From the NCBI RefSeq assembly GCF_021028975.2, contig NC_059429.1, positions 111,290,001 to 111,354,000 of the forward strand: a stretch of 64,000 bases of DNA, given 5' to 3'. This DNA comes from Sphaerodactylus townsendi (Eukaryota). Positions 2,908 through 44,612 of the stretch are shown here, in pieces (position 1 is the stretch's first letter; every line of letters starts with the position of its first letter). The position numbers and the translations under genes are program-made. The notes under the pieces are model-generated. The model was not told the DNA's origin and did not search any database. It saw nothing but the letters and a program-made list of their open reading frames with translations.

Positions 2908-3307
2908 AAAATGGGTTCAGAGGAAAGTGGCCAAAATAGTAACAGGTCTGGAATCTATGTCCTATGAGGAAGGGCTTTGGGAGCTAGATACGTTTAGTCT
3001 GGAGAAGAGAAAGCTAAGGGTAGATATGATAGCCATGTTTAAATATTTGAAGAGATGTCTTGCTGAAGAGGGAGAAAGCTTGTTTTCTGCTACTCCAGAC
3101 ACTAGGACAAGAAGTAATGAATTCAAGGTGCAGGAAAAGAGATTTCCCCTATAGGAAGAACTTCCTGTTAGTAAGGGCAGTTTGACAGTAGGATACACTG
3201 CCTTGGAGGGTGGTGGAGTCTCCTTCTTTGGAGGTTTTTAAACAGAGGCTGGATGGCCGTCTGTCAGGGGTGCTTTGATTGTGGCTTCAGGCAGGAGGTT
3301 GGACTAA
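2908..3307 (+). mobile_element. CR1 LINE 3' fragment
   Basis: ORF GLESMSYEEGLWELDTFSLEKRKLRVDMIAMFKYLK...RTRSN is the typical CR1 ORF2 C-terminus. Confidence 0.88.
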
Positions 3308-5546: not shown

Positions 5547-5729
5547 CTTCTGTGAGCTGAATGACTGGGTCCAGTGATATAAAACCAGCCTGTCCTTGGA
5601 TCGGAAAGCAGGGTGTGCCGGGTCCTGGATTTCCTCTGTCTCCATGGATTTGCCTGCTGCATCGTTCTCCAGGGCTGAAATGGGCCACCAGCTGCAGTTG
5701 GTGGGAGTAACATTGTTGGGAGTCGCCAT
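5547..5729 (-). CDS. GDAP1L1: GDAP1L1 coding exon 1 (61 codons); remaining exons not seen, presumably left of the window
   Basis: Translates MATPNNVTPTNCSWWPISALENDA...LVLYHWTQSFSSQK, matching the recalled GDAP1L1 N-terminus. Followed by a phase-0 donor AAG|GTAAAG. Synteny with OSER1 and JPH2 fits. Confidence 0.93.
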
Positions 5730-15326: not shown

Positions 15327-16029
15327 TCAAGTGTACATCATCTCTGCCATGTGAGACATTTTCTTGGGAATATACAAATAATACTCCATGTACCCTGAAA
15401 GATCTTCAATAGTCACATCATCCACAAAGACGCGGGCTTGCTCAGAACACGACCGGGCAGAGCCTGATGAACACGTGCCAGAGGGTGACCTGTTTGGCAG
15501 CGACTGCGAACGCACCTCCAGGACGGCCTTTTCACATTCCGACAGGACGCTCCGCAAGCCAGAGAACGAATACGCCTCTATTGCCTGCCACGGTTTGCAC
15601 CGGCATTCCTTGTCCAGACAAGAGCACCGCTTCCCGTAACTCAGCTTGGATAACGCCTGGAAATCTGAAGGATGGCTGGGATCCAGGCCGGTCTCAAAGG
15701 CCAAAGAAAATGCAGAGCAGCTCTTTCTCAAATTCTCGGAAGGCTGCTCGCTCGTACAAGTGCTCCAGTGCTCTGCTCTGGGCCTTCTGCAGTTATTGCT
15801 GTCAAAAAGAGGACACCTCTTTCCTCCCAAATATGGCTCTTCTGTAATGCCAGGGTCTGGACTGAGTTTGCTCTTTGAAACATCCACCTGGTTTTTGTGT
15901 TTAAGCTGGTTACTGGTGGAAGATGCTTTCATGCTGCAGTATGTAAACTTGGGGGGATGCAGGACGGGGGATTTGGAACGCCTGCGGCGCTGCGGCCTCG
16001 TCATTCCTCTCAAGGGTTTCCTTGCGCAC
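15327..16029 (-). CDS. OSER1: OSER1 paralogue A, last coding exon
   Basis: Acceptor tctctcttcag|G. Encodes [28 protein letters not shown] and the OSER1 C-terminus [35 protein letters not shown]-stop. Confidence 0.95.
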
Positions 16030-16509
16030 CTGAAGAGAGAAGAGCAGCATTATTCAGAATCTCATACCCAAATAAAATGCATTTTAAATAAAAGAGATTT
16101 TCTATCATTCTGAGTATTGAAGCACATCAATAGAAAAGATCATGAGGCTGGATTTGGCGCAGTGTTTTTGTGGGAGCAATGGCTTCTACCTGACGAGTGT
16201 GACTTTCTCAGCTCCCCCATTCCGTGGCAGATGAAAACGCCCCCTCCTACAAATCCTTCTCCTTATGTTAACTACAGCTAACAGAAGTCATAGAACTTAT
16301 TTCTGTCATTTCTGAACTACCCTCATCATGCAACAGGTTATTAAAGGACGGTTGCAGTAGGCTGCAAGAGAAGATCACATCACTAATTTTTAGCTGAACT
16401 TACTGGCTAAACAGCTATAACAACTGCATAATGGAATATAAAGAAAATGAATTTAATCTTTGAAGGGGGATGTGTCTTGGACAAGCAACTGTTCAGGAAG
16501 AAATCTTAC

Positions 16510-16611
16510 CCATGCCAGGTCTCTCTTGAGCAGACGGTTTGATGCCTGGCTCCATCCACGGTTGCTCGGACAGGAGCTCTCAGGCCGGTACCTTCGCTCA
16601 TAGGTGTAGAC
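16510..16611 (-). CDS. OSER1: OSER1 paralogue A, middle coding exon (102 nt, phase 2/2)
   Basis: ttaacgtag|G...CATGG|gtaag. Encodes [34 protein letters not shown], similar to recalled OSER1 GEGTGVRAPVRTA...SKDSWHG. In frame with both neighbouring exons. Confidence 0.92.
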
Positions 16612-16977
16612 CTACGTTAATGGGAAACCAGAATGAGAAAGCTTTGCTCTCAAATGAAAGGTTTGCTGGCAGATTCGAATGACGTTTAAAGTACAGTCGA
16701 AGGCATGCCTAGATGCCTCTCCAATCATCTGAAAAACGACTTTGCAATTTATGGCTTACGTATAAATGAGTGAGAAATACGATGTGATGTTGTCATACTG
16801 CCACCTAATTTTGTTGTTGTTGGAATTTTAGCACTAAAAAGCTAAACAAACTGCCACTGTGTCTTGGGTAGGAAATGTCTTGGGTAGGGAAAAGTCCGCC
16901 TTGTCCCTATACATTCCACTATGTGATGGTTAAGGGCACCACTCATAGGCCCCTTCTGCCTCATAGGCCCCTTCTGC

Positions 16978-17437
16978 CAAAGGCGTAGCTAGGGAAAATA
17001 AAGCCCGGTGCAAAATCTGAGTTTTGCGGTGGGGGGGGGGGCATGTTTGTGTATCCTTAGGAGACTGTCCTGATGTTACCACCCAGGTTTGGTGAAGTTT
17101 GGTTCAGGGGGTCCAAAGTTATGGACCCTCAAAGTGTAGCCCCCATCTCCTATTAGCTCCCATTGGAACCAATGGGGGATGGGGACACCCCCTTTGGGAA
17201 TCCATGACTTTGGACCCCCTGAACCAAACCTCACTTAACTTGGGTGGTATCATCAGGAGAGTCTCCCAAAGATACCCTGAAATTTTGGTGCTGCTAGCCT
17301 AAAAAGTGTACCCCCTGCAGGCCTAAAACTGAAAAACACTAAAAATACAAAAAACAAACCTGAATGTTTGTGCCCCCTGGTGCGCGTCCGGTGCAACGTG
17401 CACACACCCCACCGTCCCCCTTGTATCTCCGCCTTTG
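16978..17437. mobile_element. Non-autonomous hAT-like element nested in a palindromic MITE
   Basis: Ends CAAAGGCG / CGCCTTTG, 8-bp TSD ccttctgc/ccttatgc inside the MITE TIR. Core is shared with the element at about 35-36 kb. Confidence 0.7.
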
Positions 17438-18420
17438 CCTTATGCACATGCAGAATAATGTATATTTGATCCACAGTAAGTAAAATCCAGCTTCAAAGTG
17501 CATTGAAAGTAGATTGAAAGTGCATTAATCTACGTGTGCGGAAGGGGCCATAGTCACTAACTGGTGATATTACTACCGGTACACAGTTGATCTGTATGAA
17601 TCTGTTCAAAAGATAACCCAATTTGTTCCTAACACACTTTTTCAATGAAGAAGTATATAAGCTATATGTGGCTATTATTCCAAACATATTGTACAGTTGG
17701 CTTTTATTTAAAATAAACAGGTGGCCTTCCATGACTGGATCATCAATTCAGTAAGTAAGAGGACCAGTAATACAGCATAAATAAGGCAGATAACGTATGC
17801 TTCCTCTTGATCTTAATCCCAATAAACAAAACAAGGGATATGTTGGTTAGAATCTTGCCTTTAACTTTCAGTAATGCGAGCAAACAACTAATCAACCAAT
17901 GGAACAGCAAAAAAGATCTGAAAGCTAGCTTGAATTCAAATCCTAAAGCATGCTATGTAAACATGAGTATCTGAAATCTGTAGGGATTGCTTTTATGTAA
18001 CATATTTGCAATCAGAGCGCTAAACCTACTGAAAAACAACTACTGTTTCTGCAGAATGGGGAATGGCTGGGTTTGAAAATGGAGACCCAGTTACAAGCAT
18101 TCCAAAACAGCATAATTTCAACAAAGTGGAAAGAATAAAAAACATCTCCAACAATGTACGACAGCAGAGGTAAGGGTAGAGAGCACAGAAAACACGTTCA
18201 AGTAGCTTAGGTGAAGGCAAATGAGATTCCAGATCTTAACTGTTAGTAATTGTACAAAGCTTCACTTTTTGGACAATGAGTATGGATTACTGAAAAAATC
18301 GTGATGATGTATTTTCTCCAATTCTTTTAAATGGTTCTTAAACACCCCCTTTACTATAAATCAAATAAAACATGCCTTCAATTTTTAATGGTTTGAATGC
18401 GGAAAGATGAGCATTCACAT

Positions 18421-19090
18421 TCCAGGTTAGACTACTGTAACTCACTCTACACGGGCTTGTCTTTAGCCATGATCCGCAAATTAAAACTCATTCAGAATGC
18501 AGCAGCCAGGCTGCTTACGGCAGTTTGAGCAGGGATCGAATTACACCGATCCTATACCATCTGCACTGGCTGCCGATTGAGTTCCGGATTATGTTTAAAG
18601 TGTTGGTTTTGACCTTCAAAGCCGTTCGCGGTCTCAGACCTGCATACCTGAGGGACCGCCTCTCCTCATATTGCCCCGGTAGGCTCCTCTGCTCCTCGGA
18701 GGAGGACCTACTCGTGATCCCTGGCCCAAAAATGATCAGGCTGGCCTCTACGAGGGGCAGGGCCTTTTCAGCCCTGGCCCCTACCTGGTGGAACAGGCTC
18801 CCTCGGGAGATCAGGGCCCTGCGGGACTTACAGAGTTTTCGCAGGGCCTGCAAGACGGACCTGTTCTGCCAGGCGTTTGGCCAGCCTGATTAAAAATATA
18901 TCTACCATGTTATCTGGCCTCCCGTGGGCACAAAAGGGGGGAGGGGGTAGCCGGACGCCATCCACATTTTTAAATGAGTTCTGTTTTTATGTAACTGATA
19001 TTTAAATTATGTTTTAAGGTATGTTTTAACCTTGTTGTGAACCGCCCTGAGCCCTCAGGGGGAGGGTGGTATATAAAATAAATTAATAAA
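18421..19090 (+). mobile_element. L2-type LINE 3' fragment
   Basis: ORF ...ITPILYHLHWLPIEFRIMFKVLVLTFKA...RAFSALAPTWWNRLP. 3' end ttgtgaaccgccctgagccc with an AT-rich tail. Confidence 0.88.
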
Positions 19091-19320
19091 TTGTGGAATG
19101 CGCCTCCCGTTGAAAGACATTTATACGCATGTCTTTGGATGTACTTTTGGAGTTTAACAAGGCTGAACTGCTTTCTTCCTGGCCAGTTTTTGCACCCTGC
19201 TCATCCACATGGGAAAATGCCTACGTTGTTAACAAAAACACTTAACATGGTTTACATCTGAATAGGTTAGAATCCCAATAAAAAGATCACCAACAAGAAT
19301 AGTACAATAACCATGAGACA

Positions 19321-19435
19321 GCCACAGATGCAGGCGAAACATTAGGAACAAGATCTTCCAGGCCACGGCCACACAACCCGGAAAACCCACCACAACCAGT
19401 TGAATCCGGCCGTGAAAGCCTTCAACAACACATTC
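19321..19435 (+). mobile_element. 5'-truncated Penelope-like terminal repeat
   Basis: Same family as the 8.1 kb copy. 12-bp TSD AACCATGAGACA at 19309-19320 and 19436-19447. Confidence 0.8.
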
Positions 19436-19471
19436 AACCATGAGACAAATTCATGTGGCTTTAGTCACCTA

Positions 19472-19567
<96 letters not shown>

Positions 19568-20421
19568 CTACTTGACCTGCCATATAATGAATACTAACAA
19601 AAGAAAAATAAATTACAGTGAGATGAGTTGGAGAACATTACACAAATCCACTAAAATCCACCAAAGAAGCACCAGTGACAATACTACATTATTACTTGTA
19701 TTATTACATTTAGCTCAGATGCAGTTTGACTCATGTTGACACTGCATGTGAAAAGACATTTTACAAAAAACAGGCTGAGGTAATTTGGTAAGACAATCCG
19801 AGGTTTCATTTCTACCAACATCCATGTGACTGAGGGTACACATTTTCCTGCATGATTTCAAAACTTTTTTTGCCAATCACAAATGGAAATGGATATAAAT
19901 ATATGATGAGAATACATGGTAGCCTTTCATTTAGAGAAAATGCTATCCCATGGAATACTAAAGCTGAGATAGAGGCAATGGACAATATAGTATTTACTAA
20001 CGGCAAAAGTACATCTTTTCTTCCCCAATCGATCCTACACCACAACATTAACTGCAGTGGAGAAGGATCTGTTTAATAAATATTTTATTAAATATGCAAG
20101 CCAATAGCTAAAGCTACTATTTCATATTGGAACCAAGGCTGGAAAAACTGCAGATATCTAAACAACTCCTTGATGGAAACTACACACGTTAATTATTTTT
20201 TGAGCTCTGATCAGGATTCTTTACAGATAGGGAGGGAAAGAAGATATAGTGTCACGCATGGAAGCAAATATGACAAATGAACTATAAAATAGTACTATAA
20301 AATAATAAAAAATAGAAAGATCCTTCTCACTGAAATGTGCTGATAACTGACATTCAGGCCATTACAGTCCAGATAGGAAGGTCTGTTGTCATTCAAGGTC
20401 ACAGCTAAACAGACTGCCATG

Positions 20422-20648
20422 ATATTGTCGAAGGCTTTCATAGCCAGATTCAACTGATTGTAGTGGGTTTTCCGGGCTGCGTGGCTGTGGTCTGGTAGAT
20501 CTTGCTCCTAACGTTTCACCTGCATCTGTGACTGGCATCTTCAGAGGTGTACACCTCTGAAGATACCAGCCAAAGATACGAAGCGAAACTGGCCTCAGGA
20601 ACAAAGATCTGAACCAGCGACCACCACAACCCTAGGAAAACCTACCAT
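20422..20648 (-). mobile_element. Penelope-like inverted terminal repeats with hammerhead motif (20507-20547, minus)
   Basis: Palindrome centre tcttcagaggtgt|acacctctgaaga. 12-bp TSD CAGACTGCCATG at 20410-20421 and 20649-20660. Confidence 0.8.
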
Positions 20649-21829
20649 CAGACTGCCATGGGTTTTTCCTGCATTACATGGAAGCCATCCCACATAAATG
20701 TGACATACACATAAAAGACTTCATGTGATTATTTAATATGGAATAGGATTGCAGTCTATTCCATTGTTTACCGAACATACTCTCTTACTCTCATTGTCTT
20801 CCACTTTTATAATCCAATTTTTGTCATTATTTATTATATATCTTGTCAGATACCTTTTTTGTACTGTTTAATTTTTGTAATGCTATTCCTACTGCATCAT
20901 TTGTTGTCTGTCTTGTGCTATTTGACCGCATTATTTTACACTGTGTAATCCACCTAAGTCTCAGCGAGGAGGACAGGTTTTAAATAAAGTAGATAAATAA
21001 ATGATTGCTAACTTGTTTAGCAACAAAAGCATCATGTGATACAGTTCCTTATTTCATCAATAGGCTCCAACTAATATACTGAAATGTAACTTTGCACAGT
21101 AACACATACACGATGCTTTATCCAGCATTTTTCACAATGATAAACCCTCAATTAAATTATCAGTAGTAAATTTTCTTTAGTGGACACCAATGATGGCAAG
21201 ACTGTCACGTGGATATGAAGCAAGTAATCACTGTTCAGTCTAGAAGAAACTAAAATGTATAAGCATTGATAGGAAGAGACCCATGGCTCAGCAGTAGAGT
21301 ATCTGCTTAGCATGCCAAAGATTCTAGGTTCACACTGCTGACCCAGATAAGACCGCTAGTCTGACCAGTTTAGGACAGCTTCATGTCTTCATTGACAGGT
21401 TGGGATTCAAAAGATAAGCATTTTATGGTTGCAAAACACATGCAACAGCTCCAAGAAATAATAATGACAGCTGTTAAAATTTTGCAGCTGGACAATGCTA
21501 AAAGCTATAGTTACATTGTCTTAGCAGTGGAGCAAAGTCATCCAAGTTGGTTAGGGCATGCCTCCAACTGTTCAGGCAGGGCTATGCAAATTTTTTTGCT
21601 ATTCTCCTGGGCTGCAGTGGGGTGGCCTTTCCAGAATTACTGTAGCCTAGCTCCATCAATTTCTCTCTTCCTTTTCTGCACCTGTCACATTCTTTTTTTG
21701 GTGTTTTTTAATTCATTTTCATTTCTTTTTTTCCTTTTTTTGTAGGGGGTAGGAAGTGGATGACTTTGCCCCACTGAAAAGAAGACTGCCTCACCATTAG
21801 TCCAAGCTGTTTTTCTTTTTCAGTGGGGC

Positions 21830-22240
21830 CCTGTCATCCAGGCTGGTTATATACAAGAGCCTCTATATAAGGGTGGGACCAGTAAGAAAACCACTTGTGG
21901 CCAAAATTCTGCTCTTATGAATCCTACTGTACTACCTGTTGCAGGGCCCACCTTCTGATGGCCGCTTCAATTGAGCCCTGTGGGTCCAATCTGTAGAGTC
22001 TCACAAAGGCTGAAAAGGAGGACCAGGTGGCTGTTCTACATATTTCTCCAGAAGGAGCCCTGGCAGCAAATGAAGCAGATGCACCCGCTAATCTGGTCAA
22101 ATGGGACATGATGCCACTGAGAACGCTGAGTTTTGGACCGTGCAAGCTGTCCAAATACAGTCTAATTCATCTTGCTATGGCTGCTTTTAGAAGCCTTTTT
22201 TCCCCAAGCAGTTGTTTCCATAAAGCATGGGCAGGGGAGT
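21830..22240 (-). mobile_element. DIRS-like retrotransposon fragment (tyrosine recombinase C-terminus)
   Basis: SHLTRLAGASASFAARAPSGEICRTATWSSFSAFVRLYRLD matches the H-S-T-R...ICRAATWSS..TF.RHYRLD motif of DIRS1 recombinases. Confidence 0.75.
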
Positions 22241-24219
22241 CTGTAAGATGCAGATCCTGAGGAACAGATGTAAGATGCAGATCCTAAGATGGATTTTTGG
22301 GGAACAGCCAGCATCTCTGCAAATTCCTACCAATTTCCTCTGTATAAGCAATTATTGTTAATTTATACTAATAGTTTGATTGGTGGCTTTTGTAAATTTA
22401 CAACGGTGCCATTCTTAGCAATCCACAATTCAGTTGTGGGAATTGGCATCTTGCTGCTTATGATTGTCCTCAGTGTAATGGTAGTTCATGCCAGAACCGC
22501 ATTCTGATTGAAATGTCCACAGTACTCACTGATCAGGAACTTATACAAGCTCGAGTTCTAAGCCAAATATGAAGTTTATGGTGAATTCCAACTAAGGGGT
22601 GACAGAGAAAATAAAATGAATAAGAAGATTCCCCCCACCCCCACACACAAACTCATTCCCCTAATGTTCTATATTTTATCCTCCAAAGAGCTGATCCTGA
22701 GGCTATTTTGCTTAATGACTTATTCAACACAACAAAAAGGCCTTTTGTAAGTCTTTTCCTAGAGACCATTATGGGTAAATATTAGTTACTGTATTTTCCC
22801 CGCTAGGCAACCACCACTTTCTCTGAATTGCTAACTTTCCCCATCCCTTCTCATGCAACTATTTTGATTTTCTAAGAATTTAATTACTCATCAGTAGAAT
22901 AGACAAGCTGGGAAGAAGGCAATTAAAATTCAGTGGAAGTGTAAAATGTTTATATTGGTTGAACTACAAAGTAACTTTATGTTGTTCTTAACAATGCAGT
23001 TAGTTTTACCCTATGACAACAACCATTCTGCTTTTCAACAATTACACCTGGAGTCTTATACGAAATGAAACAATTCCATTCTGTTATATCCAGCACTATA
23101 AAGCAGGCCAACAAATGATTCAGAGTGCAAAACCAAAGAAGTTGTATGCTCTACAGCAAGTCAATACACTCCACATGTCAGACTTATCCAGTGTTTTCCA
23201 TTGGCACTACTTTTAAATACACAGTGTGTGTGCATGGCAGCCACAGGCTTCGATTCATCAGAGAACATCCGCAAATAGAGGGGAGTGCTCTCTTCTCTTG
23301 ATGTTCCTAGGGGGTTCTCTGTCCTCCAGGAATTCAGGAGCAAGAGAGGGAAACAAGGAAGTTTCCATTAACAGAGATCCCTTCTGTCCATGGGAAATCC
23401 TCTGGTGGACCCAAACCTATATCATAAAGAGATATGTAATTTATTAACATTTCAAATTAATGCTTTGGCCCCAAAAGTTTTAGAATTATGTTGTAATGCT
23501 ACAACGAGACATTCACTTGTTGAGCAGACTTACTGAAGTCCTCAGCAAATCAACATTTTTAAAAATTAGGATGTCAGACCACTGTAAGACAACTTTTGTC
23601 AAGACACACAAGGGTATCTTCTCAAGGAGAAGAACAGAACAAACACTAACACACGCATGCTTTTAATGCATTAGCAAGCAAATTGTGAAAAATGGTTGGG
23701 CAGTCCGAACTAAGGGGCGAGGGAGAAAATCTGCACACAAATATCCCACACTGATCATTTTGTTCCATTTTCAAAGGAAAGCACAGATCCTATACAGTTG
23801 CATTTAAGATCGAGGCCAACAGGTCTTTTCCTCAATCAAGCATACAGCTTGAAAGACGACAAAGAGCGGCAATGCTCTCTGACAAGGACCTTATGCAAGC
23901 TCGGGTTCGAAACCAAATATGCCGTTTATGCTGAATCTCTCCAGACAAAGAAAGCTCTACATACACGCGAAATGTTGAATGAAAGTAGACAACAGTCTCG
24001 GGCGTTTGGTGGAAGCTTTAGTCACCCCAGCCGTTAGCACACAGAATAAGGCAGGTGCAGCATGAGATATAGGAAGGGGGGAAGCATGGGAACCCTGACT
24101 CAGTGGCCAGTCCCCAAGGACCCTCTGCCTCAGGCAAAAAAGGCGGCTAAGAGAGTTGCCTGCAAAGGGGCCCGCTAAGTGAATCCCAATGGAAGAGCTC
24201 ATTCCCTCCCCCCAGACAG

Positions 24220-24760
24220 CCACTTTCCACCTCCGCCACCCAACAGACTAAGAAAGTATCCATCATCCGCAACGCGCCACTCACCAGCACACTCGCCACA
24301 GTCACTGTCGGAAGTGATCGAAAAAGCAACAACAGGAAGTGGCGACAACAGCCGCGCATGCCCAAATCGCAGAGGGAAGCTTCCCCGCGCGCATCTCGCC
24401 AATAGGGAGGAGAAGAGTGGGCTCGTCTCTCGTCCGGGAGGAGCGCATGCGCATTGAGGCCAACCTTCCGTCATTCGCCAGATCTGGGCTCGCGTTCTGG
24501 TACTCTCGCTCGCAGGGTCGCTTCTACATCCGGGTCGTTGGCTGTCGCTTCTCAGGCGGGAGGACGGCGGCGTTCGAGGTTTTCCCTAGGCTGCTTCACT
24601 GACTCGAGTACGTTGGTCCTCTTAATCAACCGTCGCTGGCGCTTGCTGGTCTCTTCCAAACCGAAAAGGGCTCAGCGCAGCGGTGCTTGTTTCTCTTGAG
24701 TCACAACTTCGGGCGTTGAAGCCTCCGTGTTTAGAAGATTCTTCCTTAGTGCTGAGTCTC
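24220..24760. promoter_or_regulatory. CpG-island, probably bidirectional promoter between the two OSER1 copies
   Basis: Dense CpG. NRF1 palindrome GCGCATGCGC at 24443-24452, ETS/GABP CGGAAGTG at 24309-24316 and CAGGAAGTG at 24333-24341, CCAAT at 24399-24403. Minus-strand donor CTG|GTGAGT at 24285/24284 fits a non-coding exon 1 of copy A. Confidence 0.8.
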
Positions 24761-24792
24761 TGGTAAAACGGATTAGGGAGTCCTTTTGCGGG

Positions 24793-25007
24793 TTCTTTAA
24801 CAGGTGGAGACTCAACAGGTAGAGAGGATTCTTTAACAGGTGGAAACTCAACAGGTAGAGAGGATTTGTTAACAGATGGAGACTCAACAGGTAGAGAGGA
24901 TTCTTTAACAGGTGGAGACTCAACAGGTAGAGAGGATTTGTTAACAGATGGAGACTCAACAGGTAGAGAGGATTCTTTAACAGGTGAAGACTCAACAGGT
25001 AGAGAGA
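24793..25007. repeat. 36-bp minisatellite, 6 copies
   Basis: Unit TTCTTTAACAGGTGGAGACTCAACAGGTAGAGAGGA starting at 24793, 24829, 24865, 24901, 24937 and 24973. No spacers. Confidence 0.95.
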
Positions 25008-26339
25008 CCTGTGTTTTAATATCGGCTCCTCTTGACGCGTGGTCACCGGGGGTCGGGGCTGAATTTAGGTCAGATTTAAGCATGACGCTATCGGACAAGC
25101 ACCTCGTCGGTGACCTGGCGTTTCCTAAGGTCTGGCCTACCCATTCAGCAGAACGAGATGTCGAATTAGTGATGCAAAAATTAGTTTGCTGAGAATGGGA
25201 AGTGTGTTTGTTATTTAAACCTTGAATCGATTATGCAGGAATAATAATAAGAGTATTAATTTGTTGTTGATTAAGTAACTGCTTATTAGATACTTAGTGC
25301 TGTTTTGGAATTAAAGGTTAGAAGCTATTGAATTATAAACTATGCAGAGTTCTGTCTGAATGATATTAGTACTGTAACTTTAAGATCCAGTGTGTTAGAG
25401 TTAATATATGTATAGTCAATGGGATTCTGTATTTTCTTTTTTCTCTTTCTATATTTTCTTATCTATTTTTGAATTATATTTCAGAAAACTAAGAAAAATA
25501 TTATTAAAAAGAACTAGTAAGCGATGCTTATTCAGCTTGCCTTTCTATTTTGAAGGCTTCTCTGTGTTAGAGAAGGGAAAATCCCCTGTCAGTTGAAAAC
25601 TACAAACAAATCTAGGCCATTCCAGGTAAAGGGTTTAGTTCTGCCTGCTCTGTGGCTTCTGCTCGTGGAGGCTTGCTTAGTGGAAGGGTGTGTTCAGAAA
25701 ATGCGATTCCCTCGTGCAGTGAGGGGTATTACAATGCACTGTCTCAGCGCTCTGTCACTTCATGCTGTGTTTGTACACAGGGTTTAATATGCATTGCTTC
25801 ACATAGCAGCTGAGTAGTCTGCTTAAATCAGGTGCTGGCAATGTGCTGCATCACATGTGTGCATTTTACTTGCCCAGTGGTGACACATTTATATCAGTTC
25901 TGAGCTTGGAAGATATGAGATGAGTCATCTTCATCTGGCTTCCGGTCTAGAATTCCCTGCCTCAAAAGGCTCATCAGAATCATAAAATCATAAAATCATA
26001 GCGTTGGAAGGGGCCATACAGGCCAATGCAGGATCAGCCTAGAAACTACCTCATGCCTGATCTCTGGCGGATTTATTAAAATATGTTATGGAAGTGTATT
26101 TTAATGCTTCAATTTGTAATGCAGGTTTTATGTTGCTGCTTACATATTTATATGCTGACTTTTATTCTAGCTATTTTAGTTTTGTTCAGGGTTACTGCTG
26201 GCCGTTCACTTAAATTGCTTTCTTTAGGTCTATTTATGCTTTTATTTCTTGTTCGTATTGAAAGCCGCCTTGAGAATTACAATAAAAATATGGGACAAAG
26301 TTACTAAATAGGTGAAGTGTTACTCGTTGCTGTGTCCCC

Positions 26340-26870
26340 ATCACAGAAAAAAATAAAGTAAAAATAAAAGAATTCAATAGAAACAACCAGGGAGAAGGGC
26401 CAATAATAGGTATTGGGTATGCCAAACAAAAAAGTCTTCACCTGTTAGCAGAAGACAATGATATCAGAAGACAAAACTAATCTATCTGGAGAAGAATTTT
26501 CAAAGTTTTGGTGCCATGAACGAGAGGGCCCTTTCTGAGATCACCAACGTGTGTAGCTTCAGATGGTGGGAGCACCTGAAGCAGTGCCTTTGATGATGAT
26601 TGGAATGAACAGGTAGGTTCATACTGGAGAAGATGGTCCTCAAGTTATACTGGCCACAAGTATTGCAAGGTTTTAAAGCTCAATATGAGCCCCTTGAATT
26701 GGGCCCAGAAGCAAGTTGGTAGCCAGGATACACCGAGAGAGGTTGAAGCGATACGGTACCTATGACCCATTCCAGTCAGCATTCTGGCTGCAGCATTCTG
26801 TACCAAATGTAACTTCCAGACAGTCCGCAAGAGTAGCCCTACATAGGGCACATTGTGGCAATTTAATTTA
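26340..26870 (-). mobile_element. Degenerate L2-type LINE 3' fragment
   Basis: ORF YVGLLLRTVWKLHLVQNAAARMLTG...WLP...FKGLILSFK. Confidence 0.75.
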
Positions 26871-27447
26871 GAGGTACCAGAATATGCACCAGCTCATGGC
26901 TTCATTCAGGAATCACTGAAGTTCACCAGTCGGCACTCATTCCATTAACTCACTCAAGAATGGTACATTTGAAACTGGATGGTAGCCAACACTTGTGGGT
27001 TTAGAGTAGATTTCTATCAGAGGGAATGGATCACTTTCTTCTTTAAGGCAGGTCGACCACCTCCTCTCTCAAGGAGACATTTACTGCCTCCTGGACCCAG
27101 TCTGCAAGCTCCCTAGCAGATTTAAGCAAGCAGTTGGGAGGTCTCAGGTTTCCAAGAACTCTGTCCACATCCTCACATTGTATAAGCTGAAAGGTGTCCC
27201 ACACAACTGGACACATTGGTACCCGGGGACTATCCTATCCTGTCAGTATTAATGTAGAATCCAAGGCAGAGGATGGGAGAGACTTCATTCGGAAAGGGCT
27301 TAGCAAAATAATTGCAGTGGTCTGCAGAGAATTCCTCCTGCTCTATGCTGAACCCAGTAGGTCCGGATCCACCCAGAAGGGTTCTGCAGGTCTACACTGT
27401 TAGATACCTAATGAGATAGTTCACAATACAAACTCCACATCTTAAGA

Positions 27448-27583
27448 CAGTGGTGGTGAACCTTTGGCACTCCCAATGTTATGGACTACAATTCCCATCA
27501 GCCCTTCCAGCACGGCCAATTGGCAGGGGCTGATGGGAATTGTAGTCCATAACATCTGGAGTGCCAAAGATTCGCCCCCATGG
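27448..27583. mobile_element. Hairpin hAT MITE
   Basis: Palindromic, 8-bp TSD TCTTAAGA, core related to 9007-9141. Confidence 0.8.
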
Positions 27584-29870
27584 TCTTAAGATGTACCGTG
27601 GACAGAGATAGGGGACTCAGGCCGATAAAGCCAAGCCCCCTCCCAAACACAAAAAGAGATCAGTAGAGAGTCATGGTTTGCCTGTTGTATGTTTGGAAGT
27701 TCAAACTACAATTTGGATTATGAACTATTGTTGAGGCGTTATCCAAATTGAGGCAAACCACAGCAATGAGAGAAGGAATTATATCTGGAGGAGTCTTTCA
27801 AGAAGACAGAAATTCCTTTTCTACAACCAGTGCTGCAGACGTGCCCAGTACTAAAGCAAGAGGTAGCTGCAGAGTGCTGCACTGCATGCTGTCTCAGCCT
27901 GTTCTGCCATTCCTAGTTCTTGCATGATGTTACAAAGAGATATGCTGTATTTGCATTATGAAAAATAATGTACAATAAAGTAGCCTGCCTTCAAGTTTTT
28001 TACTTGTAAATTCAATATTAATTTTCTGTAAAGGCAGACCGTTCTCATGTACCTGCAATCATCCATTTGCTTGGTAGGTGACTAGCACAGGAAGCTGTTG
28101 TAGGCACAGGAAGCTGTTGTAGGCACACGCCGCTTCCTTTTGGGTTTTCGTCGGTGCCTGATTCAACACCTGGTGTATACACCAAGCACATTGTGACACA
28201 TCGATCCTTCTAGATGTGTCATAATGACATCCAACAAGCAAGGCAAGTAAGAAACCTACCTGATTAAATCATGCCAGAGCCAACAAACATCACCTGAGAG
28301 GAGCAGGGAGGGAGGTGCATCCAAGTGAGCACCGTTCTAGTAGTTTTTCTACTCTCTCTTTTCCTTGTCAACTTGAGCTCTGAAGGCTGGGAAAATCGGC
28401 TTTCCTTGTTGGTGTACAATTCAGCATAGGAAGGTCAAACTATTCTTACTCTTTGAAAGTTGTAATAGCTGTTTTCAGTAGAGCAGTACAGACATGCTTA
28501 TAGGGGGATAATTCAGGACAAAGCAGTTTTATTTTTATCTTATTTTTATTTTATTCTTTGATCTATATCCCGCCCTCCCCCGTAGGGCTCAGGGCGGCAG
28601 GCAACAACTGTCATAAACAACAAAATATCAACAATTATGCCACTATGTGTGTATGGAAGTTTGAGGCATAATTACTCTTGAAGTAAGTCTGCTTGCAGTC
28701 AGTGAGACTCTAGAATCATGAATGCTTTCTTGAGAATAAGGCCTGTTGAATTTGATGTGGTTTATAATATAACTATCATGTTGCAAGTCTGGGCTTTTAG
28801 CATAGCCTTCTGGTTGGTTTGCTGGTATTCTGTGCAGAGGGATGGCGTATTTATTATTGTATAGAGGAGCATTCAATCATGAGGGGACCCCATATAAAGT
28901 CAGAATGGGGAAAATATTGACAAGCTAGGGCAGTATAGGCTTTCAATGTATAGGCTTTCATGGCACTTAGGCTTTCAATGTTTCCACCTGAATAACATTG
29001 GTTGCATGCTCTGTGTACTTTTTCTCAAAAGTCAGTCATATTGAATTTAGTGGGGTTTGATTCAGAATAAACATGCCAGATTGAATTTTTGGGGAAACTG
29101 TAGCCTCAGACATTTAGAGCTTGGTAGAAAACGCCTCGGATATCAAAATTACTTAAAGGTCCCCAATAGACTGTTTGTTATACAACTTAAATTTTGGGGT
29201 AAGGAAGGGGTGAAATCCTGATAGATGAAACCAATAAGCTGTTGAGAGCCAGCATGATGCATTGGTTAAGAGCAGGGACTTGTGTTTGATTCCCTACTCC
29301 TCTACATGAAGCCTCTGGGTGAGCTTGGGCCAGTCAGTTCTTTCAGAACTCTTTCAGCCCTACCTGCCTTACAAGGCGTCATATGATTGTAAGCCACTTT
29401 GAGGTAGAGAAAAGCAGTACATCATAGAAAACTGGTAGGGACACTGGTCTGTGCTGTTAGTAGGAGATTGTTATGTTTCATGAGTCACGTGTGTGGAAAT
29501 TAACAAGTTGCGTGCAGACTGGCTTTTCCAGAATGAATTTAGTAATGATGAAGCAGCCCTTGTGTGAAGTTTGTCCTAGATGTACCTTTCTTCCATTTGC
29601 TGTTGCTTCTTGTCTTGTAATCCTTCATATAGCTTCATTCTTTCCAAAAGAAGTGGAACTGCTTATTATATTATTTGGATGTTCCACACAGAATTGCTGT
29701 TAGCTTTTTGACTTTCTGATACATCTCCAGATAATGTTTCAGCTTGGGCACTTTCACCAGTGAAATATCAAATGAAGTCATACCTATTCAGGTGTGTCTG
29801 TGTTATTTTCATGTGCTTATATTCTCTCTTCAGCCTGCAGAGAGGGAGAGCAGTGGATTGTGCTCCAGAA

Positions 29871-29932
29871 ATGTCGGAGATTGAGGAGAACCTTCAAGCA
29901 GCTTTCAAAAAGCTAAGAGTGGATGCAGAGGG
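29871..29932 (+). CDS. OSER1: OSER1 paralogue B, first coding exon
   Basis: Encodes [21 protein letters not shown], donor GG|gtaagc. Pyrimidine-rich acceptor ctctcttcag ends at 29833. Confidence 0.9.
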
Positions 29933-29987
29933 GTAAGCAACAACGCAGTGAAATTTAGCATTTGTGTGATTTTTTAAAAATTACATA

Positions 29988-30309
29988 CCGTGTTTCCCCG
30001 AAAATAAGCCCTATCATGATTTTTCAGGATTTTTGGAGGATGCTTTAAATATAAGCCCTCCTCCAGAAATAAGCCCTACCGGTAGTTACAGTTCAGGATG
30101 GTGTGATCCAGCAGGGTTCTCCCTGCCAATGAGGATGTGGCTTGCATCACATGTGACGGGGAAGCAATGGGGCTGCTGAGAGCCCGCCTTAATGAATTGT
30201 GAAGGTACCATATTTCCCCTAAAATAAGCCCTACCCTGAAAATAGTCCTAATGCATCTTTTGGTGCAAAAATTAATATAAGACCCTGTCTCATTTTCGGG
30301 GAAACACGG
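29988..30309. mobile_element. Tc1/mariner (Tigger-like) MITE
   Basis: TIR CCGTGTTTCCCCGAAAAT / ATTTTCGGGGAAACACGG flanked by TA on both sides. Confidence 0.85.
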
Positions 30310-32225: not shown

Positions 32226-32610
32226 TACTGCTGCGTGTTCTAATGCGAGTGTTAGGCTATTGAGCTTCAACTACTGTTGCACTCTGGCTATAACTAATTT
32301 TTCATATGCGTATGTATATACATGAATTTATAGCATTGTTCATATTTTTTATATTTTTTATATTTCATTAATTTTCAACACAATCACTTCTTGTTAACAA
32401 CATCCAAAAGGTAAGTTTAACAACATCTACTTTGTGGATGAAATATAATGTAATGATGTAAATTCATGTATATATATACGCATATATATATATGTATATA
32501 TATACGCATATGAAAAATTAGTTATAGCCAGAGTGCAACAGTAGTTGTGGTCTTATTACTAATATTTACTGCTGCGTGTTCTAATGCGAGTGTTAGGCTA
32601 TTGAGCTTCA
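32226..32610. repeat. Fold-back insertion flanked by a 44-bp direct repeat
   Basis: Direct repeat 32226-32269 = 32567-32610. Perfect 46-bp inverted arms at 32268-32313 and 32502-32547. Confidence 0.9.
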
Positions 32611-33039
32611 CCACTGCCCTCCATTCACTGAACATATGCACTAGAACAGACTCCACGACTGCACTTGGCAGGAGGCAGTAGGAGAGACTGGACAAACTGT
32701 GCTGCAAAGAAGCATGTCCACCACTTTCTCATTGAGGACCCCTCTGGAGGTCTTTCCGGGAGCGCCAAGGTTTTGCAATTACAGATTGCAAATGTGACGA
32801 ACACACAACAGCCACAAAAAAACCACAAAACATTCCAACTGCTTGACAAGCAGCAACTTGAGATTGTGTCATAAATTCCTTGCTAGGCTCATTCTGTTGT
32901 GCACAATAATGACTCTGCCCTCCCACTCCAATATGCCGTGTCATGCTTCCAGTGAAGTTTCTGTCGCTGTTGACCTTAATGTTTTATTTCTTATAGCCCT
33001 CCTAGTGCTATGAAAAAGACAATAACACTAAGAACAGTT

Positions 33040-33205
33040 GAAAGCAGCAAGCGAAGAGGAAGAGCCAACATGAGATGGATTGACTCAATAAAGGAAGCCA
33101 CGGCCCTCCGTTTGTAAGACCTGAGCAAGGCTGTTAATGATAAGATGTTTTGGAGGTCATTCATTTGTAGGGTTGCCGTGAATCGGAAGTGACTTAACAG
33201 CTCGT
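33040..33205 (+). mobile_element. RTE/BovB-like LINE 3' fragment
   Basis: gaagaggaagagccaacatgagatggattgac...gggttgccgtgaatcggaagtgactt is typical of RTE 3' ends (RGR..MRWID). Confidence 0.65.
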
Positions 33206-34222
33206 AGACACGGAGTTAGGGAGAAAATGGGAGAGAGAAAAAATGAATGGTGTATCACAAATTCAGAAAGCCAGAAGGTCACCATGGATGAATGTAAGGC
33301 TTGTTTCTAGAATATACCTGTAAAAAAGTGTAAAACATGTTGTTTGTCCAATAATTATAAAAATAGCCTGTTCAATGACATTAGAACAGGTGGAGCACGT
33401 GCGTTGCTTTATTTTGGTGTGTCTTCCATTTCTAATCACTGTTTCTTGAGGCTTTCCTTAAATCTGTGAAGCAGTGATCTTAGTTTAGATACAGTTCCCT
33501 GTTGGTTTTCTCTTCAGAAAAAGTGGAAGCGTTGCTATTCTTGAGAAACAAGATGGAAACCCATGACAAATTGTGGGGTGAAAAGGAATAAATTATTTGT
33601 TAGTTTCCTCACTGTACCTCAATTCCCCTTTCCATGGTTCTATAAGCACTTAGGACTTGAGCAAGCCAATTCTCCTATCTTTGATCCACCCCCCACCCCC
33701 CACCCCCACTTCCCATAAAATGCTCAACTGATTTTAGTATTCTTTGCCTCCAAGATTCTGGGATGTCGCAGAATTCTGAGTGACTGTTTCTAGAGCAGCG
33801 CAAAGAGAATTGTGCCTGATGTTTCTGTGTATCTCTGGGTTAGCGTGTTTTTGGAAATGATGCTAATTTGGGGGCTTAAGTTGCCATTAAAGGTCTTTAT
33901 GGTGTTCTGTTTTAGTCTATTAGTGTGAAAAATCTTTGTAAATTAATGCTGTGCACAGAAGCTGAAAAATACATAGGGCTCTAAAAAATCCATTTACTTT
34001 AAACTCATAATCGTTCAAGTGCTGCATGGCAGTTAGCTGGCTCGCTTCAGGAAAAATCTGTACTATGCGAGCAAAAGTTGTTTGGCTTAGTAGGTCACTA
34101 AATAAGCCAAGTATAAATATATTAACAAGTACCATATATATCAGAAAGCAGAGGTCTATTAACCCTACTGCAGGATTTTTGGTGGGGGTTTTTTTCAGAA
34201 GGCTATTTTTTCCCCATTTCAG

Positions 34223-34333
34223 GTCCACTGCTACACTGTCTGTGAGCGAGTCGACATCTCTGAGACCGCCTGTAAGACCTACAGATGAAACCAAACAGAA
34301 GAACATGAATGCATCTAAAGAGAGCTGGCACTG
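34223..34333 (+). CDS. OSER1: OSER1 paralogue B, middle coding exon (111 nt, phase 2/2)
   Basis: ccccatttcag|G...CACTG|gtaagg. Encodes STATLSVSESTSLRPPVRPTDETKQKNMNASKESWH. Confidence 0.92.
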
Positions 34334-34705
34334 GTAAGGTGGAAGCCTGAGCCAGGCTAATGGAACCCCATCAGATACGGAGTGTTCTGCCAAAGTTCTT
34401 GGTCCTCTAGAGCAGCTTAAAAGTGACCAGTACCAATGCAGCTGATGCATGATGTTGAGCCTGAGAGGCAGGACGATGCAAACTGGTGCTGCCTTGTATT
34501 CCAAGTGATTTTAGCCCCTCCTTTTTAATATAAAATAAAGAGCTGGCCCTTGACTTCCTGTTGACAAAAAGGTGCTGCATGAGGGAATGGAGGCAGATCT
34601 TGCCTGCACTGCAGCATGCCACTGTTCCTTAGCACCTCAGAAAAAGTGCAAACCACAGGCCTGTGTTGTTTTGTGATGGGTGAGGGATCAGCTGTCTACT
34701 TACAC

Positions 34706-34816
34706 CATGTTCATGAACTACAATTCCCATCAGCCCTGCCACTTAGCCATGCTGGCAGGGGCTGATGGGAATTGTAGTCCATGAACATCTGGAGGGCCAT
34801 AGTTTAAAGACCCCTG
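34706..34816. mobile_element. Internally deleted hairpin hAT MITE
   Basis: Same core as 27448-27583, 8-bp TSD ACTTACAC. Confidence 0.75.
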
Positions 34817-34985
34817 ACTTACACTACTGCAGATAATGTAAGTATCCCATCCTTTGGCAGATTACAATCAGTACTGTGTATCATCATTTAGGAGTAGGAG
34901 AGTAGATCAATTTGTGTGCAGGTTTTCATGCTGTTCCACATCACTGGGGGACCAGGAGGCGAATCGTGGTCATGCTAGTCCACCC

Positions 34986-36179
34986 CAAGGATGTAGGTAA
35001 GGGGGGGTCTCGGGTTCAACCCCCCATTCATGTTCGAAGCTCCGCCCCCCGTTTGTGGGTTTTAAAAACATTTTTAGTGGGTTTTTTTGTTTTTGGCGTG
35101 CAGGGGGCGCATTGTTTAGGCTAGCAGCACCAAACTTTCAGGGATTGTTTGGGGGACTCTCCTGATTATACCACCCAGGTTTGGTTCATGGGGTCCAAAG
35201 TTATGGATTCCCAAAGGGGGTGCCCCATCCCCCATTGTTTCCAATGGGAGCTAATAGGAGATGGGGGTTACACATTTGAGGGTCCATATCTTTGGCCCCC
35301 ATGAACCAAACGTTTCTAAACCTGGGTAGTATCATCAGGAGAGTCTCCTAAAGATACCCTGAAAGTTTGGTGCTTCTAGCTTAACAATTGCACCCCTGAC
35401 AGCAGGCACCCCCCAAATTTCCCCAGACTCTCCTTTTAAATCCACCCCCTTTGGCATGAATTTAAAGGGAGAATCTGAGGTCCTCAGTGGAAGAAGAAGA
35501 GTTTGGATTTATATCCCCCCTTTCCTTCCTGTAGGAGACTCAAAGGAACTTAGAATCTCCTTACCCTTCCCCCCTCACAACAAACACTTGAGAGAGCTCC
35601 AAAAAGCTGTGACTAGCCCAAGGTTACCCAGCTGGCATGTGTGGGAGTGCACAGGCTAATCTGAATTCCCCAGATAAGCCTCCACAGCTCAAGCGGCAGA
35701 GCAGGGAATCAAACCCGGTTCCTCCAGATTAGAATGCACCTACTCTTAACCACTACGCCACATTGAAAGTGATGCTGTTTCAGGGTGGGGGATAATCCAC
35801 CGCAAAACAGCATCACTTTCAATGTTGTTCAACTGGGGACTCCAGATTTTCCCTTTAAGGTGGATTTAAAAGGAGAATTTGGGCTCTCTAGTTTAAACAC
35901 CATTGAAAGAGATGCTGTTTGGGGGTGGATTCCAACATCACAGTGGCTGGCGGGGTGGGGGTGGGGGTCGCAAAACTCAGATTTTGCACCGGGCTCCATT
36001 TTCCCTCTATGCCTCTGCCCAGAGGGGAGGGCAGAAGGAGCTGCCTGCTGGGAGCCCAGCTGGTGGGGGGCAGGGGAGGGAAGGGCGGCGGAGTCTGCTG
36101 TCCCGGCCTCGGAGACGGCCATGCCCTAGGGGCGGGTGGGGGTGTGCCCCTCCATAAAAAATCTATACCTATGTCCCTG
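34986..36179. mobile_element. Large non-autonomous hAT-like element with nested SINE (about 35490-35761, minus)
   Basis: Flanks gtccaccc/gtctaccc, internal inverted blocks, core shared with 16978-17437. Confidence 0.55.
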
Positions 36180-36607
36180 GTCTACCCCCATTCTGCCACT
36201 GAGCAGTTTAATGCTTACATAGAGGCCTTTGTGCATAGAGCCTAATGTCTGTAGGACATTTCCACTGTTGCATAACCTTGCAGTGTCTGGGCCACAGGGA
36301 CAGAAGCAGGTGTGCTGTTGGTAGGGTGATCTTGCCATTCCAGTTCCTCTGCTGCACACACAGTTCAAATGTCTGCACACGTTTCAGACCTTTGTTTCTT
36401 ATAAATGTTTGTTTCAAGAGGATTTTTCCTGTATTTCCACAGTCTCTTTTTTTTTGCTTGCTTGCTTTTTAATGAAACTGTGGGGAGAAAAAGAAAGAAA
36501 TCCATCTCAGGTTAGCTATGAAAAGTACTTAGAGCTTATTTTCTACTGTAGAAATCCTTGTGATACATTCTGTCTTATTCCTTTTGGAATGAGGAAGGGG
36601 AGAAGGG

Positions 36608-36890
36608 AAGCAGGTGTGGTGGTTAAGAGCAGGTGGATTCTAATCTGGAGAACCAGGTTTGATTCCCCACTTCTCCACTTGAGTGGCAGAGGTTTATCTG
36701 GTGAACCAGATGTGTTTTCACACTCCTACATTCCTGCTGGATGACCTTGGGCTAGTCACAGTTCTTCAGAACTCTCTCAACCCCACCTACCTCACAAGGT
36801 GTCTGTTGTGGGGAGAGGAAGGGAAAGGAGCTTGCAAGCCACTTTGAGTCTCCTTGCAGGAGAGAAAGGTGGGATATAAATCCAAATTCT
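36608..36890 (+). mobile_element. Squamate tRNA-derived SINE
   Basis: ggtgtggtggttaagagc...ggtttgattcccc head, highly similar to the copy at 40991-41262. Confidence 0.75.
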
Positions 36891-37186
36891 TCTCCTTTCT
36901 CAAGGAACCCAAGATGGTATAAACTAATGTGTTGCATATATTAATTAAAAAATACACAATGTAATGCAGAGAACTTTAAAGCACCACAATAGGACCCAAG
37001 ACAAAGAATGCATTTTCATGCACTCTAGTATAAAACCTCAGTTCTATGGAAGGCATTTCTTTTCTGTTCAGTGCATGTGAAAATAATGATATTTTCTAAA
37101 TTATCAGGAAGTTGCAGAGTCACAATACAGTGTGGCTTGATGGTCATCGGTGCAGAATAAACAACTAATTTTGCTTCACTTTTTAG

Positions 37187-37853
37187 TTGTTTGAGGAAGC
37201 CCTTGAGAGGAACTGTGAGAACACGGCGGCGGCGGTCAAAGTCCCCAATACTCCATCCCCCCAAGTTCATCCACTGCAGTGTCCAGACGTCTTCCTACAG
37301 CCAGCCAGCGTCCAAGAGTTCCACCAGCTCCTCTGAAAGTAGCCCTAGCCCAGATATGCCAGCTCCAAAGATTGAACAAGCCCATCATCTTCTCAGTGAC
37401 GTTGATCCCGGGGAGAATGGTGGTGAGCCACCGGAAGCACGTGCCGTAGAAACTCTGAAGAACAAAACTGAAGGTGGTGCTGTTTCTCTTCCCACTGCCA
37501 TTCTAAAAGCCACAGATCTTGCTGACTTTCAGTCCCTCTCTGAGCAACATAAAGGCGGTATCTGCGCATGCACAAACAAGCACTGCCAGTGTCAGGAATG
37601 GCAGGACATGAAAGTCTACAAGTTTTCTGACCTACAGAACTCTCTTCCATCAACGCCCGAAAGAACAACACGTGTACAGAACAATTCCCAGGTTCTTCTT
37701 TCAAGAACTCCTTCCTGCTCTCCTAGGTCTTGTTCTGAGCAAGCCAGGGCTAATGTGGATGATGTGACTATTGAAGACCTTTCAGGGTACATGGAGTATT
37801 TCCTACATATCCCTAAAAAAATGTCCCACATGGCAGAAATGATGTACACATGA
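37187..37853 (+). CDS. OSER1: OSER1 paralogue B, last coding exon
   Basis: Acceptor cactttttag|T. Encodes [32 protein letters not shown] and [32 protein letters not shown]-stop. Exons sum to 62+111+667 = 840 nt (279 aa plus stop). Confidence 0.95.
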
Positions 37854-43003: not shown

Positions 43004-43249
43004 CTTCGATGGCTTGCTTTCTTGAGAGAAGTATTTCAGATCAGAACAGACTGCCCCTGCTTTCAGAGAATTACAGGTGCTTTCCAAGGGAAGGAAATGC
43101 CCCACCTCAGAAAAGCGGCCTTTCAGGACCGATCGACCCCCCCACACCCTTGCACATTATTCTCTCTCTCTCTCTCTCTCTCCCCCCCCCCCCCCCCCTC
43201 CGCTTCTGTGGCCGTGAGCACAACTTTTCTCTTTCTTTCCAAACGGCAC

Positions 43250-44156: not shown

Positions 44157-44612
<456 letters not shown>

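What the first reader, a model, noticed from the sequence alone, without database searches (positions are those of the whole stretch)
15327..37853. Two intact, diverged OSER1 paralogues arranged head-to-head
Seen: two complete three-exon OSER1 ORFs on opposite strands (A 293 aa, B 279 aa). Both have GT-AG sites, equivalent intron positions, phase 2/2, and no stops or frameshifts. They share the [21 protein letters not shown] and CxC-x4-CxC-xx-W blocks, and 38 of the last 42 residues are identical. The central region is strongly diverged and I see no intron similarity. Established: human has a single OSER1 between JPH2 and GDAP1L1. Inference: an old DNA-level inverted duplication, not a retrocopy or assembly duplicate, with both copies kept under purifying selection. 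I do not know of a description of this arrangement.
Basis: partly seen in the sequence, partly recalled or inferred. Interest (0 to 1): 0.85.

Follow-up and report, generated by a model that had tools for sequence, protein, structure and literature searches.

The report
Ancient OSER1 gene pair, already annotated
This gecko carries two working copies of the stress-response gene OSER1 back to back; both are already in the public annotation, and the pair is an old duplicate kept by reptiles and birds, with no second copy found in mammals.

Summary
The window is Sphaerodactylus townsendi CM037618.2. So the pair is already annotated.

- It is a DNA-level inverted duplication, with introns at the same codons.
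- Both copies are under purifying selection. dN/dS against Eublepharis is 0.11 for A and 0.27 for B.

The age is far greater than "old":
- Both types occur in squamates, tuatara, turtles and birds. Crocodilians show only A.
- The arrangement GDAP1L1–A–B–JPH2, with A and B divergent, is the same in two geckos; a bird shows the same B–A–GDAP1L1 order and divergent orientation.
- In two trees B groups with mammalian OSER1 (100/99), so B is the true orthologue.
- A is a separate clade, sister to all tetrapod OSER1.
- A sauropsid-only duplication is rejected (AU p = 0.002 and 0.0006). An amniote-stem origin is not rejected (p = 0.16).
- It follows that mammals, and probably amphibians, lost A.

One conserved CpG island lies between the two genes.

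No paper in the library describes the paralogue.

The parts
19473..19549 (-). Gene A (OSER1-like, sauropsid-retained paralogue), coding exon 1, ATG at 19549; donor GT at 19472
   Evidence: joined model equals XP_048354891.1
16510..16611 (-). Gene A coding exon 2 (102 nt, phase 2 in, phase 2 out)
15327..16029 (-). Gene A coding exon 3 with stop codon. It carries the basic motif, the Cys motif and the conserved C-terminus. Pfam DUF776, 88.9 bits.
29871..29932 (+). Gene B (orthologue of mammalian OSER1), first coding exon from the ATG. An AG acceptor with a pyrimidine tract lies just upstream (about 29833). This implies a further 5' non-coding exon.
   Evidence: the GenBank model P0226 starts in an upstream exon at 28224
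34223..34333 (+). Gene B coding exon 2 (111 nt, phase 2/2)
37187..37853 (+). Gene B coding exon 3 with stop codon; Pfam DUF776, 59.1 bits
   Evidence: 100% to XP_048354649.1
23901..25000 (.). The only CpG island between the two genes (GC 0.53, CpG o/e 0.75). It is a candidate shared bidirectional promoter. It aligns to a CpG island at the same place in Eublepharis.
Evidence: No transcript evidence.
24793..25006 (.). 36-nt tandem repeat, 5.9 copies, 91% matches, at the edge of the CpG island
   Evidence: seen as repetitive ORFs
1..5729 (-). GDAP1L1-like gene (GST_N domains), on the same strand as A and downstream of it. Its annotated start maps to about 5729.
   Evidence: gene call in L002, mapped as window = 29550 - locus position
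44169..44555 (+). JPH2-like first coding exon (MORN repeats), downstream of B on the same strand. A further MORN exon lies at 59163-59918.
   Evidence: Eublepharis shows the same neighbour
16969..17346 (.). Interspersed repeat in intron 1 of A. Related copies lie in intron 2 of B (35070-36027), matching in both orientations. It is not ancestral intron similarity.

Best explanation
The window holds two functional members of the OSER1 (DUF776) family. They arose by one ancient tandem inverted duplication of the whole gene, introns included.

B is the orthologue of mammalian OSER1. A is a second paralogue that sauropsids kept. No annotated A-type protein was found in mammals or amphibians, so it was probably lost there.

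The duplication predates the mammal-sauropsid split. The best trees put it before the amphibian-amniote split and after the coelacanth split.

The two genes are transcribed away from each other, 10.3 kb apart between their ATGs. A single conserved CpG island lies between them. I infer that it serves both genes through 5' non-coding exons.

A is the slower-evolving copy and keeps more ancestral residues. B sped up on the squamate stem, mainly in its serine-rich centre.

What is shown: gene structures, identity with the RefSeq models, clade membership, synteny, purifying selection. What is inferred: the shared promoter, expression of each copy in this species, and any division of labour between them.
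For: - Structure and exact match to XP_048354891.1 and XP_048354649.1.
- DUF776 in both.
- Distribution: A-type proteins in squamates, tuatara, turtles, crocodilians and birds. B-type in squamates, tuatara, turtles and birds. The two types are often on one contig.
- Arrangement: the same divergent order, with A next to GDAP1L1, in Turnix velox. In Eublepharis macularius A is next to GDAP1L1 and B next to JPH2, as in the window.
- Tree of 69 rows: B+mammals 100/99, plus amphibians 98/96, A clade 100/99.
- Tree of 62 rows, with monotremes, marsupials, ray-finned fishes and sharks. It follows the species tree everywhere. B+Mammalia 100/99; Amphibia+(M+B) 92/87; A 100/100; all tetrapod sequences against fishes 100/99.
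- AU tests: A+B as one clade is rejected (delta lnL 44.9, p 0.0006; delta lnL 46.7, p 0.002).
- Diagnostic columns: at 5 of 6 columns where A and B are each at least 90% fixed but differ, mammals share B's residue. At 4 of the 6, fishes share A's.
- dN/dS against Eublepharis: A 0.107 (bootstrap 0.06-0.19); B 0.268 (0.18-0.40). dS between A and B is saturated.
- CpG island: 23901-25000 is the only island between the genes and aligns to an island in Eublepharis. Islands also lie between the pair in Turnix and upstream of A in Gavialis.
Against:
- The placement of A outside amphibians is not secure. A+B+mammals as one clade is not rejected (p 0.08; p 0.16).
- Absence of A in mammals and amphibians rests on two things: annotated proteins (all 59 A-type clusters are sauropsid), and 10 kb either side of OSER1 in Xenopus tropicalis and platypus.
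- The 10 kb between the ATGs is long for a classical bidirectional promoter. No start sites are known.
Confidence: 0.88

Rival explanations
1. The duplication happened on the sauropsid stem, after the split from mammals. A and B would then be each other's closest relatives, and the B+mammal grouping would be an artefact of unequal rates.
For: Only sauropsids carry two copies. This reading needs no losses. The A stem branch is long (0.24-0.25).
Against: The AU test rejects A+B as one clade in both data sets (p 0.0006; p 0.002). B+mammals has 100/99 support in both trees. At 5 of 6 fixed A/B differences mammals share B's residue, while at 4 of the 6 fishes share A's.
Confidence: 0.04
2. The duplication happened on the amniote stem, after the split from amphibians. 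It would be followed by one loss in mammals and none in amphibians.
For: The AU test does not reject A+B+mammals as one clade (p 0.08; p 0.16). It needs only one loss. Xenopus has no second copy within 10 kb.
Against: Both best trees put amphibians with B+mammals to the exclusion of A (98/96 and 92/87). At A residue 90, amphibians, mammals and B share His, while A and fishes share Tyr.
Confidence: 0.3
3. One of the two copies is an unexpressed or decaying gene in this gecko, and the intact frame is a leftover.
For: There are no read data for this species. B evolves faster: omega is 0.27 overall and 0.52 in its central third.
Against: Both frames are intact in every sauropsid order sampled, apart from B in crocodilians. 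Omega is far below 1, with bootstrap maxima of 0.23 and 0.44. Splice sites are canonical. All four conserved motifs are kept.
Confidence: 0.03
4. The near-identical C-termini (38 of 42 residues) come from recent gene conversion between the inverted copies, not from selection.
For: Inverted neighbours can convert. The C-terminus is much more alike than the rest.
Against: The DNA of that part is only 84.5% identical over 71 nt, although the protein is nearly the same there. So many silent differences have built up. The same C-terminus is kept in fishes, amphibians and mammals, which have one copy.
Confidence: 0.03

Closest known systems
Mammalian OSER1 (C20orf111, Perit1), a FOXO-regulated oxidative-stress protein (PMC11336091)
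   Same: Gene B shares the following with it:
- the same family (DUF776);
- the same three coding exons and phases (platypus);
- the same place beside JPH2;
- the same orientation relative to GDAP1L1, which for human is from my own knowledge of the locus and was not checked here.
B groups with mammalian OSER1 at 100/99.
   Different: The gecko B protein is 279 aa. It evolved fast on the squamate stem (branch 0.30-0.33). No function has been tested in any reptile.
[quoted passage not shown]
   Same: Gene A is a member of this clade (100/100). Exon 3 identity is 91% to Paroedura, 88% to Elgaria, 74% to tuatara, 70% to turtles and gharial, and 62-65% to birds. It sits in the same position between OSER1 and GDAP1L1.
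   Different: Nothing of substance differs. The naming is inconsistent between species. In this genome both copies are called '-like'. In Alligator the A type is called plain OSER1.
Human lncRNA OSER1-AS1 / OSER1-DT
   Same: PMC8177763 reports it at 20q13.12 on the positive strand. From my own knowledge, which was not checked here, this is opposite to OSER1 and between OSER1 and GDAP1L1. That is the place and orientation gene A has in sauropsids.
   Different: It is non-coding. No sequence comparison was made, because human sequence was not to be used here. Divergent transcripts from CpG-island promoters are common and need no lost gene to explain them.

Membership tests
OSER1 / DUF776 (PF05604) family | Pfam DUF776 match above the gathering score | tested here: met
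   A exon 3 scores 88.9 bits and B exon 3 scores 59.1 bits, against a cut-off of 25
OSER1 / DUF776 (PF05604) family | Vertebrate gene structure: three coding exons, introns in phase 2 and 2 at conserved codons | tested here: met
   The same three-piece pattern is found in Turnix, Xenopus, Gavialis and platypus loci.
OSER1 / DUF776 (PF05604) family | Conserved blocks FKKLRVD, [15 protein letters not shown], CxCx4CxCxxW and the C-terminal ...[14 protein letters not shown]...[12 protein letters not shown] | tested here: met
   82 alignment columns are at least 90% conserved with the same residue in both clades.
Orthologue of mammalian OSER1 (gene B) | Groups with mammalian OSER1 in a gene tree that otherwise follows the species tree | tested here: met
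   B+Mammalia 100/99 in both trees
Orthologue of mammalian OSER1 (gene B) | Conserved neighbours: next to JPH2, on the same strand | tested here: met
   MORN exons at 44169 and 59163 on the plus strand. The same holds in Eublepharis.
Sauropsid 'OSER1-like' paralogue clade (gene A) | Monophyletic with bird, turtle, crocodilian and tuatara 'OSER1-like', and separate from B | tested here: met
   A clade 100/99 and 100/100. A+B monophyly is rejected.
Sauropsid 'OSER1-like' paralogue clade (gene A) | Lies between OSER1 and GDAP1L1, divergent from OSER1 and co-oriented with GDAP1L1 | tested here: met
   Window, Eublepharis, Turnix
Bidirectional-promoter gene pair | Divergent orientation with one CpG island between the two genes | tested here: met
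   The single island at 23901-25000 is conserved in Eublepharis
Bidirectional-promoter gene pair | Transcription start sites within about 1 kb of each other, and co-expression | not testable with these tools
No start-site data are available.
Processed retrocopy | Lack of introns, a poly(A) tail, and a location unlinked to the parent | tested here: not met
   Both copies keep both introns and are adjacent

The most novel reading that the evidence does not exclude
Gene A is a distinct, pre-tetrapod second OSER family member, in effect an 'OSER2'. It is the slower-evolving, more ancestral-like copy and shares a bidirectional CpG-island promoter with OSER1. Mammals would have lost its coding capacity but kept divergent transcription from the same promoter as the lncRNA OSER1-AS1/OSER1-DT. 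Crocodilians would have made the reciprocal choice, keeping A and losing the canonical OSER1.
Probability: 0.12. Interest if true: 0.55.

Novelty: already known. Interest (0 to 1): 0.3.

Why it matters
OSER1 is a little-understood FOXO target. [quoted passage not shown] That paper's phylogeny used eight species and no bird or reptile.

Three consequences follow if the reading here is right:
- All sauropsids carry a second, strongly constrained paralogue, and none was found in mammals.
- Bird and reptile "OSER1" data can refer to either gene, because names are inconsistent between species.
- Knock-down results in chicken or lizard cells may be buffered by the second copy.

It also gives a clean case of an old tandem duplicate with lineage-specific loss. 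None of this is a new kind of biology. The pair itself is already in public annotation.

Tried and rejected
- **Read evidence.** So there are no junction reads for either copy. The local blastn of gene A against gene B started at 15393. Only local arithmetic (dN/dS, residue counts) used the full stored coding sequence.
- **Joined models.** The joined spliced models were never sent to a search tool. Searches used single exons by reference. Afterwards they used the stored proteins P0217 and P0121, which a local comparison showed to be identical to the joined models.
- **Mammal relic test.** The aardvark locus came back without DNA. Platypus showed no A-like piece within 10 kb either side of OSER1. 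This covers too little of the intergenic region to say much. Human sequence was not used.
- **Failed look-ups.** Latimeria and Mauremys gave nothing.
- **FOXO motif.** One FOXO core motif (TGTTTAC) lies between the genes, against 1.3 expected by chance, and it is not conserved in Eublepharis. That is no support for a conserved FOXO site.
- **Rfam.** No family reached threshold over 16100-64000.
- **Logan 'proteins' of 228-274 aa close to A** (P0003, P0010, P0012, P0224). These are exon-3 frames read into the intron, not spliced transcripts. They give no expression evidence.
- **Papers.** Five searches found nothing on an OSER1 paralogue. The phrase 'serine-rich protein 1-like' occurs in no paper of the library.
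- **Rejected readings.** Retrocopy, assembly duplicate and recent gene conversion were considered and rejected (see rivals).
Full report
**What is there.**
- Gene A is on the minus strand: 19549-19473, 16611-16510, 16029-15327; 293 aa.
- Gene B is on the plus strand: 29871-29932, 34223-34333, 37187-37853; 279 aa.
- All introns are GT-AG and phases are 2/2.
- The introns split aligned codons: G26/G21, and codon 60/58.
- The proteins are 52% identical over 270 aligned residues.
- They share FKKLRVD, [15 protein letters not shown], CxCx4CxCxxW and 38 of the last 42 residues.
- Both last exons match Pfam DUF776.
- At DNA level only coding pieces align between the two genes, apart from an interspersed repeat present in an intron of each.

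**Whose genome, and is it annotated.** A protein search with B's last exon returned a 100% hit of 279 aa from Sphaerodactylus townsendi.
- A's counterpart sat inside a 90% cluster headed by Paroedura.
- A local comparison showed that the joined models equal XP_048354891.1 (A) and XP_048354649.1 (B) exactly.
- The window is CM037618.2:111290001-111354000.
- So both genes are already RefSeq models, each named "OSER1-like".

**How widespread.**
- A-type proteins are found in squamates, tuatara, turtles, crocodilians and birds. Exon 3 identity to the window's A runs from 91% down to 55%.
- All 59 clusters that score above the coelacanth protein are sauropsid.
- B-type proteins are found in squamates, tuatara, turtles and birds.
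- Many species have one of each type on the same contig.
- In Turnix velox the locus reads B(-), 4.3 kb, A(+), then a GST-domain gene (+), which I take to be GDAP1L1.
- In Eublepharis it reads GDAP1L1(-), A(-), 13 kb, B(+), then a MORN gene (+), which I take to be JPH2.
- The window is the same: GDAP1L1 from about 5729 (-), A, 10.3 kb, B, then JPH2 exons at 44169 and 59163 (+).

**When it arose.** I built two maximum-likelihood trees (LG+C20+F+G4).
- The first had 69 rows.
- The second had 62 rows. It added monotremes, marsupials, gar, bowfin, teleosts, sharks and a chimaera, and it follows the species tree at every other node.
- Both give B+mammals at 100/99.
- Amphibians come next, at 98/96 and 92/87.
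- The A clade (100/99 and 100/100) is sister to all tetrapod OSER1 and lies inside the coelacanth.
- Holding A and B together costs 45-47 log-likelihood units and is rejected (AU p 0.0006 and 0.002).
- Holding A, B and mammals together is not rejected (p 0.08 and 0.16).

So the duplication predates the mammal-sauropsid split. Whether it also predates amphibians is open.

Six columns are fixed differently in A and B.
- At five of them mammals share B's residue.
- At four of them fishes share A's.
- At one (A residue 90), amphibians, mammals and B share His, against Tyr in A and fishes.

Xenopus tropicalis and platypus show a single three-exon OSER1 and no second copy within 10 kb either side.

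**Selection.** Coding sequences of both Eublepharis genes were recovered from their loci and reproduce the stored proteins exactly.

| Pair (Sphaerodactylus vs Eublepharis) | dN | dS | omega (NG86) | bootstrap 95% | bootstrap max |
|---|---|---|---|---|---|
| A | 0.043 | 0.40 | 0.107 | 0.06-0.19 | 0.23 |
| B | 0.115 | 0.43 | 0.268 | 0.18-0.40 | 0.44 |

- B's central third has omega 0.52; its ends have 0.21 and 0.14.
- Between A and B synonymous sites are saturated.
- Across clades A has 137 columns at least 90% conserved, against 105 in B.
- Both copies are therefore constrained, A more strongly.
- The like C-termini are kept by selection, not by recent conversion. Their DNA is only 84.5% identical.

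**How it probably works.** OSER1 is a FOXO-regulated factor that protects against oxidative stress (PMC11336091). Nothing is known for the paralogue.
- The only CpG island between the two genes is at 23901-25000. It aligns to an island at the same place in Eublepharis.
- Islands also lie between the pair in Turnix and upstream of A in Gavialis.
- B's first coding exon begins at a splice acceptor, and a GenBank model places an upstream exon at 28224. So 5' non-coding exons exist.
- I infer, without transcript data, that one island drives both genes in opposite directions.
I reached the island independently and confirmed its position and conservation. Its remark that human has a divergent lncRNA at A's place could not be tested here. 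A paper gives only the band and strand of OSER1-AS1, and human sequence was not used.

**Limits.**
- No reads could be laid. 
- The joined spliced models were not sent to search tools. Exons were searched singly by reference, then the identical stored proteins were used.
- Absence of A outside sauropsids rests on annotated proteins and two 10-kb flanks.

**Verdict.** This is a real, intact and constrained gene pair. It is an ordinary tandem duplicate of a known family and is already annotated. Its deep age, its absence from the mammals examined and the inconsistent naming appear not to have been written up in the papers searched.

Noticed in passing
L005 (Gavialis gangeticus MDVQ01000059.1) and the protein lists: Crocodilians show only the A type. 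No crocodilian appears among the 120 best B-type hits, although turtles and birds do. No B exon lies within 10 kb either side of gharial A. In Alligator mississippiensis the A-type protein carries the plain name OSER1. They may have lost the canonical OSER1, the reverse of mammals.
   Followed up: partly
P0214 (Paroedura picta XP_077183295.1, contig of 177.5 Mb): Paroedura has a further A-type protein of 293 aa, flagged LOW QUALITY PROTEIN. It is on a different chromosome-scale contig from its A/B pair. It could be an extra copy or a retrocopy.
   Followed up: no
window 24793-25006: A 36-nt tandem repeat (5.9 copies, 91% matches) sits at the edge of the intergenic CpG island. It produces long repetitive ORFs on both strands (SLPVESPPVKES...).
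   Followed up: partly
window 18525-18893 (+) and 50876-51307 (+): ORFs share a '...LHWLP..FRI.FK...' peptide, typical of an interspersed repeat. Several other ORF peaks (for example 14383-14742, 20389-20604 and 42917-43408) share 'PATDAGETLG.RSTRP.P.SPENP', which is another repeat family.
   Followed up: no
window 19550-29870 against Eublepharis (L006/L007): 44% of the 10.3-kb intergenic region still aligns, in the same order, between two geckos whose synonymous-site divergence (dS) in these genes is about 0.4. Blocks of 76-82% identity lie just upstream of each ATG and at 25777-25921 and 28699-28764.
   Followed up: partly
window 50001-51400 and 42801-44600: There are further CpG-rich stretches. 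The one at 44101-44600 covers the JPH2-like first coding exon. The one at 50001-51400 lies in its first intron and overlaps a repeat-like ORF.
   Followed up: no
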